Shown piece after piece: positions 4,491 through 10,839 of a stretch of DNA of 64,000 nucleotides. The notes beneath the pieces were generated by a model. It worked only from the letters and a program-made list of their open reading frames with translations, did no database searches and had not been told where the DNA came from. The translations under genes and the position numbers were made by a program. Within the stretch, counting starts at the first letter, position 1. Each line of letters begins with the position of its first letter. The DNA is from Entomortierella parvispora E1425 (Eukaryota > Fungi > Mortierellomycota), in NCBI GenBank assembly GCA_020891255.1, contig BQFW01000017.1, positions 1 through 64,000 of the forward strand, read 5' to 3'.

Positions 4491-5778
4491 ATGAAAATCA
4501 CGATTACTTCTGCCCTTCTCTGCTTGGCTGCCACCTCCCGCCGTCGCGGACCAGAAGGCTCAAATCCCCCAAAGGCTGAACTCTGACGCTGTCGATCACC
4601 GCCACCATGAAATCAATGCCGCAGAATTGGCCCAATATCGCCCGTTGGGTGTGATGCGCCATGAATACCAAGTTCAAACGAGCAGCAGCAGCAGTCACCG
4701 CGATCATCACTACGACGAGGAGGAGGATGACGGTAAGGATCATTCTCACCATCGCCACGACAACGACGAGGAGGATGATGACCATGAGGAGGATGATGAC
4801 CATGAGGAGAGGGACCATGATGATGACCATGAGGAGAAGGACGAAGAGGAGAAGCACCACAAGAGCCATCATGACGAGGAAGAGGACGATGATGAGCACG
4901 AAGGTGCCAAGAAGAAAGGCACTGACGACAAGAAGGACCACGAGGAGCATAAAACTAGCAAGAAAGGAGGACATTCCAAAGATGATGGCAAGAAGGACGA
5001 CAGTGAGAGGAAGGATGGCACTGGGAAGAAGGGAGGCGATGCTGACAGCAAGACTGTTGATGAAGTGAAGGACAAGAAGAAGGGTACCGAGACCTCCCCT
5101 GCATTGGCGGATGGGTCTTCCAAGACGACCAGCAAACCCGGACAGGCTACCATGCCCACGGCTGGCACGACCTCCAACACTGCGCCTTTATGGCTCGTGC
5201 AGCCTTTCGGTGCCTCTGTTTGGGAGCAGGGTAGGACTTACGTTATTAGCTGGGGACCCAACCCCGACCCCATCTTCACCGAGGGATTCAAGCCCAAGAC
5301 ACCCGTTAATGTCCACCTCATGCAAGGCCCCCACGACAACTTGCTTGAGGTTGCTGTTCTCAAGGCGGCTATGGACTCCTCATTGAATTCGTTGCAGTGG
5401 ACCGTGCCCGCAACTCTGGCTCCCTCAAAGGATTATTCTATCCGTCTGTCACACGAAGGCGATCTCGATACATATTCTCACTATTTCGAGGTCTCCGAGA
5501 AGGGTGATCCCCGATCCACAAAGTCCAACGTCGGCGAGCCTTTGCAAATGCCTCAAAAGACAGCAGATATGGGTACCACTCTTCCAAAAGGCGCGATTAA
5601 CAAGCCTGCTGCACCACCAAATCCCTTCCCTGCTGAGAAGACTGTGGCTGCGAAACCCGCGGTCACCAAGCCAGCAATGCATTCCTCGGCAAACTTGGGC
5701 GTGCCAGGTGAATCCCGTCAGGGTGCAAACATGATGGCTCTTGCCATGGCTCTCTTCGGTGCCGTTTACTTTTTGTAA
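4491..5778 (+). CDS. Secreted/GPI-anchored protein: His/Asp/Glu-rich N-terminal region plus Kre9/Knh1-like (Ser-Thr-rich GPI family) Ig-like domain; one extra C after the signal peptide
   Basis: ATG 4491 encodes signal peptide MKITITSALLCLAATS. Removing one C from CCC 4537-4539 joins it to ORF 4627-5778 (SAVADQKAQ...). Domain WLVQPFGASVWEQGRTYVISW...LQWTVPATL..SKDYSIRL...YSHYFEV; hydrophobic C-terminal tail MMALAMALFGAVYFL preceded by small residues. Confidence 0.75.
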
Positions 5779-7691: not shown

Positions 7692-9540
7692 ATCCAATTC
7701 TCTTATCCTTGCCCATCCAACCCCGGGCGCCTTGTACTTTAGTCTCTCCCTCATGCATTCTATTCAGTAAAAGCACGACGATCACGTCGGCAACAAAAAA
7801 AAAAAAAAAAACTTACAACGCGGCTTCCACTCCCTGTGCACGCAAATCAGATTCCTCAGACAACATGGGCTTCTCACCTTGTACATGTACATGTACACGT
7901 AACTCTATGGATAGCCCGTTTGCGAGAGAAAGGAGAGCGTAGGGTCATTGTTGTGGAAGTTTCATTTTCACTTGAGAGAGGAAGAGTTTGCAATACCCAC
8001 TTTGTTCACCTTCTTGAGAATTAGCATGCATCCTTTCCACGATCTGCGCCTATGTTTCCCCTCACGTCTTTGTTCTGCATTAGCCTTCACACATTTACAG
8101 CATCGGCCAAACCTTCAACTCACCACAGCTCGATATCACTATGAAGCGTGCATCACACGAGCGGCTTTCTATGGCACGTTGATAGCAGGAGCAGAAAGAA
8201 GCAGAGGAAGGAGAGGAGACGTCGTCCGGGTGGCAGCGCACTTGGTTACTTACGAATTTAGTTCTTTCCGATGTCGCCGTAAACCTCAAGTGCATGCTAA
8301 TATGCACGCAAACGTTCAATGATATTATGTCGGGGAAGGCCATGGTACTCCAATTAGTCTCTGTTGTCTCGACCTGCTGCTCGTCTGCAGTGCCTTCGAG
8401 AGTAATCGTTATTGGCGATATTCTCCGTTTTTCCTTTTCCTTCAAGCTTCTAGTACTCAGTCAGAGAGGCGGATGATATGCTGGGAGACAACATTTCTTG
8501 GAAGAGCAACAAGAAGTAGATGATCGACTTGGAGCACCTAGCAGTCGATCGGCAATGACAGGGCGAGACCTCTAGATTCGAGGGCAGAAGGTCATTACTC
8601 GCAGCTGGGCCCAGACTCTAGATCTCCACTCTCATTATCGCTGGCTGTGGTGTTGTACAGGTACAGTGTTGTTGTGAGACCGCAGTCTGCCTGTTGCACC
8701 CTAACTTCTACTGGAGTTTTGTTCATTCCATTGAGGTAACACAATGCGAAAGAAAACACGCGAGCGAGCGGAAAGCAACTGACATTCCTACAACCCCCAT
8801 AAACCTCACTAGCTCCATCTCTGGTCTGGAAAGCAAGATGAACCTTTCGCCGTTCCTCGTCTGGTCCCGAGTCAAAAGCTATCTGCGCAGAGCCTCTCTT
8901 GTTCTTTTTTCTTCTGTAGGACAATGCAGGTCCAGGGGCGACAGTTGCACAAAGAAACCCCGTCCACGTTGTTAAGAACTTGAGAAGGAGACTATTCAAA
9001 CGACGGTTTATACTTTTATAGGTTTACTCTGTGCAATGAGATGGGAAAAGCCTCAGGTTCGTGTACCTCTTGTGCCTTGCTGAGCAGTTAGGGTGGGGTT
9101 TTGCATGGGAAAAAATAAGGCAGCGGACATTAAGTGTCCCTGATGTGTTGCTCACCAAGAAAGAGATGCAAACTACTGTAGAGAGGATGCAGGATGGGTG
9201 GCGGGGATGAGAAACCACAGCGGGATGACTAAAAAAGGTAAAGGGTTCCAGGAATGGCGTCAGAATGGATCATGCCACAAAGGTATTAGAGGGCGTAATC
9301 AGAAAGAGGCGTGAGAGCGAAGGCCCTGTATTCATCTGGTGCGACAGTGATTATGATGGCAGCCAGAGGAGCCGCCTGCACAAGTTAAAAAGAAAAAGCC
9401 CTGCCTGCCAGCGTTGCCACGCGTCCTGTGGTGAAACACGACTTTACCCGATCCTGAACAAGACTTCTCAATTGACATAATCTACCTAATAAAGAGGAGT
9501 GGGTCGTCGTCTTTATTTTTTTTTCTCAGGGATCAAGGAG

Positions 9541-10025
9541 TTATCAGATTGAAAATTAGAAGTCCTTCATTTTCTGGTCCCGCAACATCCCGGGAACGGC
9601 GAATGGGGCTAATCAGATTGAAAGAAAGGGATGTCTGCAGTTTGTTGAGATGTGCAGTCGTCCCAGCGCGTGTCCCGGGTAAGTGAACAGGAACATGAGA
9701 GCCCGACATAGAAAGTTGACGCCAACGGTCAAAAAAAAAAAAAAAAAAAGAGACGCGGGTCCATTGGCGGAGTGAGTTTATCGTACTTCAGAAAACAAGG
9801 AAGGGTCTATCCCACGGGTTGCTTCAAAGTAGCCACCCAAGCTTGCTTCTGAGCAGTTATCAGATCGAAAGAGGCAGCATTCAAGCCCAGACAAGTGTAC
9901 TGTAATTCTTTAGCTCTATATCCCGGGTGAGGGTGAGGTTATCAGATCGAAAACGTGAAAGGTCCAGGCCTTGAGTTACGAAGAAGGCAGTTGTGAGGTC
10001 GAGGCATTTCACGAGGATCTGATAA
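9541..10025. promoter_or_regulatory. Cluster of iron-responsive GATA-repressor (SreA/Sre1/Fep1-type) sites, ATCWGATAA
   Basis: TTATCAGAT at 9541-9549, 9857-9865 and 9939-9947, ATCTGATAA at 10017-10025, and variant TAATCAGAT at 9610-9618. The four forward copies are followed by YGAAA. Confidence 0.8.
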
Positions 10026-10257
10026 CAAAATTACCTGGACACCGTGTTCTTGTTCCCCCGGTTCAAAGCTTTTTTAAACTCCATCGTCCTTGAACTCATT
10101 CCACCTGCAGTCTCATGGGATCAACGGCTAAACAAGAAGGGGTTGAGTCAATTGCTACCACCAATGGTGATTTGCAACTGGCTGTCTCTTGCGAATGGTT
10201 CCCGTAAACGATCCTTTGATCGTTGGTCAACAGCGATGAGGAGCCCATAAAAAAACC

Positions 10258-10264
10258 TATATAA
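10258..10264 (+). promoter_or_regulatory. TATA box of the small secreted protein gene
   Basis: TATATAA about 95 bp upstream of ATG 10359, followed by a CT-rich tract typical of fungal start regions. Confidence 0.6.
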
Positions 10265-10358
10265 GCAGCCTCGCCAATGCCTCATTTTCTTGTCCTCCAT
10301 CCTCTTCCACTCTTCCATTTCTCAACAACCCAACCCAACCCACCCAGCTCTCACCGCA

Positions 10359-10839
10359 ATGCGTTTCTCTGCCGCTGTCGTCCTCGCCTCCTTGGCTGCC
10401 TTCGTCACTGCTGCTCCTGTCAGCAAGGCTGTTCAGTCTGAGTACTTCCCCTTCACCCCTGAGGGTCCCTGCGTCTCCGCATGCACCAACGTAAAGTTCA
10501 TTCTGGCGTTCTCTATCAGTGCTGCCATGAAAATGAAATAGGACCCTGATGAACACTTTCTGACCACCCTTCTCCACTTTATCAAAACAATAATAGTCCG
10601 TTGGCAAGTCCCTCTTCGTGAACTACGATGACCTCGACTCGTACGGTCCCAACTTCATCCAGTCGCTCAGCTACACTTTCGAGCGCGGTTCGCCCACCAC
10701 CATCTCCTTCATGACCAAGGCCGGTACCTGCATGTCCACCTGCCCCCAGCCCGAGTTGGACATCTACACCGCCAACTACCCCCTCAAGTTGACCTGGTAC
10801 AAGGCCCACAAGCTCGACACTCCTCCTCCCCGCCCTTAA
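10359..10839 (+). CDS. Small secreted 4-Cys protein of unknown function (124 aa; exons 10359-10490 and 10597-10839)
   Basis: Signal peptide MRFSAAVVLASLAAFVTA; in-frame GT-AG intron 10491-10596; two C-x3-C motifs (PCVSAC, TCMSTC); strong bias to C/T-ending and AAG codons. Confidence 0.9.

What the first reader, a model, noticed from the sequence alone, without database searches (positions are those of the whole stretch)
9541..10025. Five-site array of the iron-repressor consensus ATCWGATAA upstream of an unknown secreted protein
Seen: TTATCAGAT at 9541, 9857 and 9939, ATCTGATAA at 10017, and TAATCAGAT at 9610, giving an extended consensus GTTATCAGATYGAAA. At uniform base composition ATCWGATAA is expected about once per 65 kb (both strands), yet four perfect copies fall in 485 bp; I noticed no others in the window by eye. 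Established: ATCWGATAA/ATCWGATAW is the binding site of the two-finger iron-responsive GATA repressors (Aspergillus SreA, Histoplasma Sre1, S. pombe Fep1) and clusters at siderophore, haem and reductive-uptake genes. Inference: the adjacent gene is a tightly iron-repressed member of the iron-starvation regulon, and the extra YGAAA may be a lineage-specific extension of the site.
Basis: partly seen in the sequence, partly recalled or inferred. Interest (0 to 1): 0.85.

Follow-up and report, generated by a model that had tools for sequence, protein, structure and literature searches.

The report
Conserved iron-repressor GATA site array
Four perfect copies and one imperfect copy of the fungal iron-repressor DNA motif sit in front of a small secreted-protein gene in the soil fungus Entomortierella parvispora, and the same motif marks relatives of that gene in nine genera of early-diverging fungi, which makes this uncharacterised protein family a strong, testable candidate for a new iron-uptake component.

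Summary
ATCWGATAA occurs four times in the 64-kb window, and all four copies lie within 9541-10025. A fifth, one-mismatch copy is at 9610.

The window is from Entomortierella parvispora (Mortierellomycota). The array lies 340-820 bp upstream of a 124-aa secreted, four-cysteine helical protein (EMPS_03492).

The decisive new result is conservation.
- I examined 172.75 kb in all: the window plus 12 non-redundant loci that encode relatives of this protein.
- 33 of the 34 perfect sites lie within 1.3 kb upstream of family genes (binomial about 4e-27).
- Nine of eleven genera with enough upstream sequence carry two or more perfect sites. These span Mortierellomycota, Mucorales and Umbelopsis. Basidiobolus and Malassezia do not.
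- Between genera the promoters are otherwise unalignable.

The sites are therefore real cis-elements, and their sequence is that of the two-finger SreA/Fep1/Urbs1 iron repressors.

Three points remain inferred. I could not test iron-responsive expression, the presence of an SreA orthologue in this genome, or the motif at FTR1/FET3. First-stage scan notes report similar arrays elsewhere in this genome, at FTR1 and at a siderophore transporter, but these are unchecked.

The proposed YGAAA extension is not general. Only a purine directly 5' of the motif is conserved.

The protein has no Pfam or PDB match. Its resemblance to CFEM proteins is weak.

Verdict: a new member of a known kind of element, pointing at an interesting new target family.

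The parts
9541..9549 (-). Perfect ATCTGATAA site 1, 818 bp upstream of the ATG
   Evidence: The flank is TTTCA-ATCTGATAA-C. No substitution here in the ~93%-identical relative X2. An alignable island around it is retained in the more distant relatives X3-X5.
9610..9618 (-). Degenerate copy ATCTGATTA (GATA core changed to GATT), with the same TGAAAG-side flank as site 1
   Evidence: Function is uncertain because the canonical GATA core is lost.
9857..9865 (-). Perfect ATCTGATAA site 2, 502 bp upstream of the ATG
   Evidence: No substitution in X2.
9939..9947 (-). Perfect ATCTGATAA site 3, 420 bp upstream of the ATG
   Evidence: The substitutions in relatives X2-X5 at 9953 and 9954 begin directly after the 15-mer 9938-9952.
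10017..10025 (+). Perfect ATCTGATAA site 4 in the opposite orientation, 342 bp upstream of the ATG. With site 3 it forms a 78-bp inverted pair.
   Evidence: (I13/I14).
10161..10165 (+). CCAAT box, with a second one at 10274-10278. A possible CCAAT-complex site, not enriched over background.
   Evidence: (I19).
10258..10265 (+). TATA-like element TATATAAG, about 95 bp upstream of the ATG
   Evidence: A GTATAAAAG-type word is conserved in five orthologous promoters.
10359..10490 (+). Exon 1 of the secreted-protein gene (44 codons, with a hydrophobic N-terminal signal-like segment)
   Evidence: 100% identity to EMPS_03492 of Entomortierella parvispora.
10491..10596 (+). Intron (GT...AG, 106 nt)
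   Evidence: Read directly from the sequence. The exon junction agrees with the orthologue alignment.
10597..10839 (+). Exon 2 (80 codons plus stop). The mature product is a four-helix protein with two CxxxC pairs.
   Evidence: and (AlphaFold2 model of the orthologue P0002, pLDDT 79). The C-terminus ending in PPPRP matches the orthologues, unlike the 108-aa database model.

Best explanation
The array is a cluster of binding sites for a two-finger, SreA/Fep1/Urbs1-class GATA repressor. In this reading the iron-loaded factor occupies the four perfect R-ATCTGATAA sites when iron is sufficient and shuts off the downstream secreted-protein gene. The sites often occur in closely spaced, oppositely oriented pairs, which may allow cooperative binding. 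When iron is scarce the factor leaves and the gene is transcribed from the TATA-containing core promoter.

Shown here: the sites exist, they are clustered far beyond chance, and they have been kept in front of this gene family across Mortierellomycota, Mucorales and Umbelopsis while the surrounding promoter sequence has diverged beyond alignment.

Inferred from established knowledge of Dikarya: which factor binds, that iron is the signal, and that the effect is repression.
For: -: all four perfect sites of the window fall in 485 bp. About 0.03 are expected per 1.4-kb promoter.
- orthologous promoters carry 2-4 perfect sites each, in Actinomortierella wolfii, Podila horticola (both tandem paralogues), P. 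clonocystis and Mortierella sp. GBA30.
- without any prior, ATCTGATAA and GATCTGATAA are the top conserved non-low-complexity 9- and 10-mers, present in 6 of 6 promoters with enough sequence.
- promoters of different genera share nothing else alignable beyond short matches (<=27 nt), mostly the sites or A/T runs.
- distant family members also carry sites. Rhizopus delemar RO3G_11245 has three, Lobosporangium two, M. alpina two, Mucor mucedo a pair at each of three tandem copies, and Umbelopsis three.
- 33 of 34 sites lie in 24.6 kb of family promoters, against 1 in the other 148 kb (binomial 3.6e-27).
- position -1 is a purine in 31 of 34 sites.
- a ~93%-identical relative has 19 substitutions in 9500-10030 but none inside sites 1-3 or the degenerate copy at 9610.
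- Literature: ATCWGATAA is 5.4-fold enriched in the A. fumigatus SreA regulon and matches the in vivo Urbs1 and Fep1 sites (PMC2610380). SreA homologues exist in Mucor (PMC7011435) and Rhizopus (PMC12638772). The motif was noted in silico at the Mucor rhizoferrin synthetase promoter (PMC9226013).
- the other genes of the window that I scanned are housekeeping-type and carry no sites.
Against: - There is no expression evidence. No RNA run holding this locus was listed, and I found no iron transcriptome for any Mortierellomycota in the paper library.
- I could not show that E. parvispora encodes a two-finger GATA factor with the cysteine-rich linker.
- I could not fetch FTR1, FET3 or siderophore loci to test regulon-wide enrichment.
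- GATA factors are expanded in Mucoromycota and Mortierellomycota, and in Rhizopus DAP-seq all GATA factors bound similar regions (PMC12638772). Sequence alone therefore does not name the factor.
- Family members in Basidiobolus (five tandem genes) and Malassezia lack perfect sites.
- The fifth site has a broken GATA core.
Confidence: 0.68

Rival explanations
1. The sites are real and conserved but are bound by a different GATA-family factor, such as a nitrogen-type AreA/Nit2 factor, a white-collar-2 type light factor, or one of the lineage-expanded GATA factors. The gene would then respond to nitrogen, light or another cue rather than iron.
For: GATA zinc-finger genes are expanded in Mucoromycota and Mortierellomycota, and all Rhizopus GATA factors bound similar regions in DAP-seq (PMC12638772). 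Two window sites contain GATCGA, which from my own knowledge resembles the Neurospora white-collar motif. There is no iron-expression evidence here.
Against: What is conserved is the full nine-base partial palindrome plus a 5' purine, not merely HGATAR. A second inverted GAT half-site is what a second finger in the same protein reads, and in fungi two fingers are the hallmark of the SreA class (established knowledge; PMC2610380). GATCGA is absent from most sites outside Entomortierella and Podila.
Confidence: 0.18
2. The conserved word is bound by a non-GATA factor, or it acts as an activating element, for example through a Cir1-like dual activator/repressor. The direction or nature of regulation would then differ from classic iron repression.
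For: Nothing here shows the direction of regulation. From my own knowledge, Cryptococcus Cir1 both activates and represses. Additional locally conserved words lie next to some sites: CCCGGG and the TTTCG flank.
Against: The match to a well-characterised repressor site is exact in 34 of 34 copies by construction, and the flank preference (5' purine) matches, from my own recollection, the (G/A)ATC(T/A)GATAA consensus of Histoplasma Sre1. No alternative factor with this specificity is known to me.
Confidence: 0.1
3. The array is a chance cluster or the residue of a local duplication or mini-repeat with no regulatory role.
For: The count of four per window is reached by 2 of 100 shuffles. The four direct copies share a 19-nt family, which could reflect local duplication.
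Against: The clustering probability is about 1.7e-6. The same word recurs at family promoters in nine genera whose promoters are otherwise unalignable. Close relatives show no substitutions within the sites.
Confidence: 0.02

Closest known systems
SreA regulon promoters of Aspergillus fumigatus and A. nidulans (ATCWGATAA sites at siderophore and reductive iron-uptake genes)
   Same: Identical nine-base motif, present in multiple copies within about 1 kb upstream of the regulated gene (PMC2610380).
   Different: The phylum is different (Mortierellomycota), where neither the factor nor any iron regulon has been described. The target is an uncharacterised secreted protein rather than a known uptake gene. 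Site density is high, with four perfect copies.
Fep1-repressed shu1+ (GPI-anchored haem receptor) and str3+ (MFS haem transporter) of Schizosaccharomyces pombe; Sfu1-repressed CFEM haemophores Rbt5/Pga7/Csa2 of Candida albicans (from my own knowledge)
   Same: Small cysteine-rich secreted or GPI-anchored proteins under a two-finger GATA iron repressor. The Mucorales relatives of the window protein have eight Cys, a Ser/Thr-rich linker and a hydrophobic C-terminal tail. They often sit head-to-head with an MFS transporter across a site-bearing intergenic region.
   Different: There is no detectable sequence homology: no Pfam CFEM match and no PDB sequence match. Fold similarity to Csa2 is weak (Z 3.5; Foldseek E 0.06-0.3). 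The window protein itself has only four Cys, no anchor and no MFS neighbour.
In-silico SreA site at the Mucor lusitanicus rhizoferrin synthetase (rfs) promoter, and the SreA-like GATA Znf4/Znf8 of Rhizopus microsporus
   Same: These are the nearest phylogenetic precedents for SreA-type control in early-diverging fungi (PMC9226013, PMC12638772, PMC7011435).
   Different: They are single-site, single-species observations or in vitro cistromes, with no stated link to this gene family. Here the association is shown by conservation across two phyla.

Membership tests
SreA/Fep1/Urbs1-type iron-repressor site cluster | Sequence matches ATCWGATAA | tested here: met
   Four exact matches, plus one one-mismatch copy.
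SreA/Fep1/Urbs1-type iron-repressor site cluster | Sites lie in the 5' upstream region of the regulated gene, usually in several copies | tested here: met
   The sites lie 342-818 bp upstream of the ATG at 10359. No other gene has its 5' end facing the array.
SreA/Fep1/Urbs1-type iron-repressor site cluster | Sites conserved at orthologous promoters | tested here: met
   33 of 34 sites lie in family promoters, and nine of eleven genera are positive.
SreA/Fep1/Urbs1-type iron-repressor site cluster | The genome encodes a GATA factor with two zinc fingers flanking a cysteine-rich region | not testable with these tools
   No tool fetches fungal proteins by name, and none is encoded in the window or in the 13 loci held (regex scan). 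The literature reports homologues in Mucor and Rhizopus only (PMC7011435, PMC12638772).
SreA/Fep1/Urbs1-type iron-repressor site cluster | The downstream gene is repressed by iron and derepressed on starvation | not testable with these tools
   No RNA run was listed. RO3G_11245 does not appear in the searched papers.
SreA/Fep1/Urbs1-type iron-repressor site cluster | Motif enriched at canonical iron-uptake genes of the same genome | not tested
   Only unchecked first-stage notes exist: s1-173478 (FTR1), s1-201118 (siderophore transporter) and s1-183338. Those loci could not be fetched.
CFEM domain proteins (for the downstream protein) | Match to Pfam PF05730 | tested here: not met
   No CFEM hit even at E<=10 for the nine Mucorales/Umbelopsis members of alignment A2, and none at E<=0.01 for P0002.
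CFEM domain proteins (for the downstream protein) | Eight cysteines with the CFEM spacing | tested here: not met
   The window protein and its Mortierellaceae orthologues have four Cys, as two CxxxC pairs. Mucorales relatives have eight, but with no CxC and a different spacing. The CFEM spacing itself is recalled from memory.
CFEM domain proteins (for the downstream protein) | Helical-basket fold like Csa2 | tested here: inconclusive
   Csa2 (4y7s) scores Z 3.5 at rank 14. The top Swiss-Prot model hits are CFEM proteins, with probability 0.41-0.94 but E 0.06-0.3 and TM below 0.35. Foldseek finds no PDB hit.

The most novel reading that the evidence does not exclude
The array may mark an ancient, undescribed iron-acquisition module of early-diverging fungi. 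Its core would be a secreted or GPI-anchored twin-CxxxC helical protein acting as a haem-, siderophore- or iron-binding scavenger, perhaps a distant cousin or forerunner of CFEM haemophores. It is often paired head-to-head with a dedicated MFS transporter. The module would have been kept under SreA-type GATA control since before Mortierellomycota and Mucoromycota split. The Mortierellaceae protein in this window would be a derived, soluble four-Cys form.
Probability: 0.35. Interest if true: 0.75.

Novelty: new member of a known kind. Interest (0 to 1): 0.58.

Why it matters
Iron regulation is well mapped in Ascomycota and Basidiomycota. In Mucoromycota and Mortierellomycota it is almost unstudied, although iron uptake is central to mucormycosis.

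The SreA-type word is conserved in front of one uncharacterised secreted-protein family from Mortierella to Rhizopus. This gives two things:
- evidence that the GATA iron-repressor logic predates the Dikarya;
- a concrete new candidate for extracellular iron or haem capture, with a human-pathogen orthologue (RO3G_11245) and, in several lineages, a linked MFS transporter.

Both points can be tested directly with existing strains and data sets.

Tried and rejected
- **RNA evidence.** No RNA run was listed for the locus. The single read-laying run was therefore spent on DNA contigs of relatives.
- **Naming the protein.** Pfam gave nothing, PDB by sequence gave nothing, and PDB by Foldseek gave nothing significant. 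ESM Atlas gave only chance-level CAP22 and CFEM leads. I rejected CFEM membership and kept it as a weak lead only.
- **Published iron-expression data.** RO3G_11245 is absent from the searched texts and from the Rhizopus-macrophage supplement. The Lichtheimia iron-depletion table (PMC4133162, Table S7) could not be used because no L. corymbifera homologue identifier surfaced. The Rhizopus DAP-seq supplements are not held.
- **SreA, FTR1 and FET3 loci of Mortierellomycota.** I could not fetch them. No tool retrieves fungal proteins by name, and I did not type sequences from memory.
- **GATA-finger regex scan.** A scan of all held DNA found nothing.
- **YGAAA extension as a general feature.** Rejected.
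- **Partner MFS in the window.** The window's own MFS gene at 27-29 kb is not the partner MFS (no tblastn hit).

Full report
**Observation**

ATCWGATAA matches exactly four times in the 64-kb window: 9541-9549(-), 9857-9865(-), 9939-9947(-) and 10017-10025(+).

Dinucleotide shuffles give 1.13 matches per window, and 2 of 100 shuffles reach four. The count alone is therefore only suggestive. Four uniformly placed sites would fall within 485 bp with probability about 1.7e-6.

The fifth site at 9610-9618 reads ATCTGATTA on the minus strand, so it is a one-mismatch copy with a broken GATA core. It is the only such copy in 8000-10400. Four of the copies belong to a 19-nt direct-repeat family.

**Where this is and what lies downstream**

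The exon-2 translation is 100% identical to EMPS_03492 of Entomortierella parvispora, which belongs to Mortierellomycota.

The gene consists of exon 1 at 10359-10490, a 106-nt GT-AG intron, and exon 2 at 10597-10839. It encodes 124 aa with a hydrophobic N-terminus and two CxxxC pairs. My C-terminus, ending in PPPRP, agrees with the orthologues. The 108-aa database model does not.

A TATA-like element lies at 10258-10265 and CCAAT boxes at 10161 and 10274. I found no convincing gene between about 7600 and 10359 on either strand, and 9358-9481 mutates freely in a close relative. The secreted-protein gene is therefore the only gene with its 5' end facing the array. The other genes of the window that I scanned are housekeeping-type, including Aph-1, a DEAH helicase, a Stealth protein, UCH, an amino-acid permease and YVC1, and none has a site.

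**Conservation, the key test**

I fetched the loci of five orthologues. Each promoter with enough upstream sequence carries perfect sites:

| Species | Positions relative to the ATG |
|---|---|
| Actinomortierella wolfii | -458, -401 |
| Podila horticola | -1281, -1222, -784, plus a pair upstream of a tandem paralogue |
| P. clonocystis | -1020, -970 |
| Mortierella sp. GBA30 | -899, -828, -197, -161 |

E. beljakovae has only 473 bp of upstream sequence before the contig ends.

- A prior-free k-mer scan ranks ATCTGATAA and GATCTGATAA as the top conserved non-low-complexity 9- and 10-mers, present in 6 of 6 promoters.
- Promoters of different genera share nothing else alignable beyond short matches of 27 nt or less, mostly the sites themselves or A/T runs.
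- A profile search shows that the family has 91 representatives at 50% identity. Members occur in Mortierellomycota, many Mucorales, Umbelopsis, Basidiobolus and Malassezia.

Distant members also carry the word:

| Species | Sites |
|---|---|
| Rhizopus delemar RO3G_11245 | -510, -229, -86 |
| Lobosporangium transversale | -585, -173 |
| Mortierella alpina | -173, -161 |
| Mucor mucedo | a pair at -213 to -290 before each of three tandem copies |
| Umbelopsis | -509, -215, -169 |
| Basidiobolus (five tandem genes) | none |
| Malassezia | none perfect, one relaxed ATCWGATA |

Over 172.75 kb held, 33 of 34 sites lie in 24.6 kb of family promoters and 1 lies in the other 148 kb (binomial 3.6e-27). 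Sites frequently come as pairs 12-82 bp apart, often in opposite orientation.

Contigs of a ~93%-identical relative show 19 substitutions across 9500-10030 but none inside sites 1-3 or the degenerate copy at 9610. More distant relatives retain alignable islands just around the sites, and a second locus there carries a site-1-like segment upstream of a paralogous coding region. The listing was truncated, so the last perfect site (10017) could not be judged.

**Extended consensus**

Across the 34 sites, position -1 is a purine in 31, the central W is T in 26, and +9 is C or A in 25.

It is a local feature and not a general extension. The 5' purine agrees with the (G/A)ATC(T/A)GATAA consensus that I recall for Histoplasma Sre1. 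That recollection was not checked here.

**Mechanism**

- It also fits the in vivo sites of Urbs1 at sid1 and of Fep1 at str1 and fio1-fip1 (PMC2610380).
- The inverted GAT next to GATAA is what a second finger in the same protein reads. Two fingers are the hallmark of the SreA class, which is established knowledge.
- SreA homologues are reported in Mucor (PMC7011435) and Rhizopus (GATA Znf4/Znf8, PMC12638772).
- The word was noted in silico at the Mucor rfs promoter (PMC9226013).

The best explanation is therefore iron-dependent repression by an SreA orthologue. The sites and their conservation are shown here. The factor, the signal and the sign of regulation are inferred.

The main rival is that another member of the expanded GATA family binds instead. 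In Rhizopus DAP-seq all GATA factors bound similar regions.

**The protein**

- AlphaFold2 gives a four-helix domain: pLDDT 79 for P0002, and about 90 across the domain of P0100.
- There is no Pfam family, no PDB sequence match and no significant Foldseek PDB match.
- AFDB clusters return only zygomycete 'secreted proteins' as significant hits, with a non-significant tail of CFEM proteins.
- The four best named Swiss-Prot model hits are CFEM effectors or a haemophore, but at E 0.06-0.3 and TM below 0.35. Csa2 scores Z 3.5 at rank 14.
- Mucorales members have eight Cys, a Ser/Thr-rich linker and a hydrophobic C-terminal tail suggestive of a GPI anchor.

CFEM membership fails the sequence tests. 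The resemblance remains a lead.

**A linked transporter**

In Lobosporangium, Umbelopsis and Malassezia the family gene sits head-to-head with an MFS_1 transporter.

- The Malassezia transporter is 53% identical to the Umbelopsis one and about 40% identical to the Lobosporangium one.
- In Umbelopsis and Apophysomyces the two genes have consecutive locus tags, and in about a dozen Mucorales they share a contig.
- In Lobosporangium and Umbelopsis the shared intergenic region holds the GATA sites.
- The window has no such partner.

**What remains open**

No expression data could be reached. The SreA orthologue and the FTR1/FET3 loci of this genome could not be fetched.

First-stage scan notes report ATCTGATAA arrays elsewhere in this same genome at FTR1, at a siderophore transporter and at another four-Cys secreted protein. 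These are unchecked leads and are not counted as support.

**Verdict**

This is a real, deeply conserved GATA-type cis-regulatory array whose sequence is that of the fungal iron repressor. As an element it is a new member of a known kind. It points to an uncharacterised secreted-protein family, and in some lineages a linked MFS transporter, as a candidate iron-acquisition system of early-diverging fungi.

Noticed in passing
L008:1237-2938(-), L013:1877-3204(-), L010:2259-3722(-): A conserved MFS_1 transporter is divergently paired with the secreted-protein family gene in Lobosporangium, Umbelopsis and Malassezia (53% identity between Malassezia and Umbelopsis). Locus tags are consecutive in Umbelopsis and Apophysomyces. 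In two of the three loci the shared intergenic region holds the GATA sites. The transporter's substrate is unknown.
   Followed up: partly
A2 (P0100 and eight relatives from Mucorales and Umbelopsis): The Mucorales relatives of the window protein have eight invariant Cys, a Ser/Thr-rich linker and a hydrophobic C-terminal tail (GPI-anchor-like). The Mortierellaceae orthologues are short, soluble four-Cys forms.
   Followed up: partly
window 10359-10839: The database gene model EMPS_03492 (108 aa, ending in YPSS) appears mis-spliced at its 3' end. Reading exon 2 through to the stop at 10839 gives a C-terminus ending in PPPRP that matches the orthologues.
   Followed up: yes
L011:2343-7328; L012:6001-12001; L004:5001-7292: The family occurs as tandem arrays: five copies in Basidiobolus meristosporus, three in Mucor mucedo and two in Podila. 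Some database proteins hold up to six repeats of the domain (P0007, 780 aa), which may be fused gene calls. The Basidiobolus array has no ATCWGATAA at all.
   Followed up: partly
window 9589, 9674, 9922; L004:4226, 6148: CCCGGG(T) elements lie next to several GATA sites in E. parvispora and Podila horticola. Three of the window's 12 copies fall in this 1.3-kb promoter. This may be a second, lineage-restricted element.
   Followed up: partly
window 4627-5778 (+): A His/Asp/Glu-rich protein with a Kre9/KNH-like domain (Pfam E 7e-11) and a hydrophobic C-terminus lies 4.6 kb upstream. It has no ATCWGATAA sites near it.
   Followed up: partly
window 9515-9524 and 9731-9750: A T-run and a 20-nt A-run form an imperfect inverted repeat about 210 bp apart inside the array, bracketing site 1 and the degenerate copy. 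Its significance is unknown.
   Followed up: no
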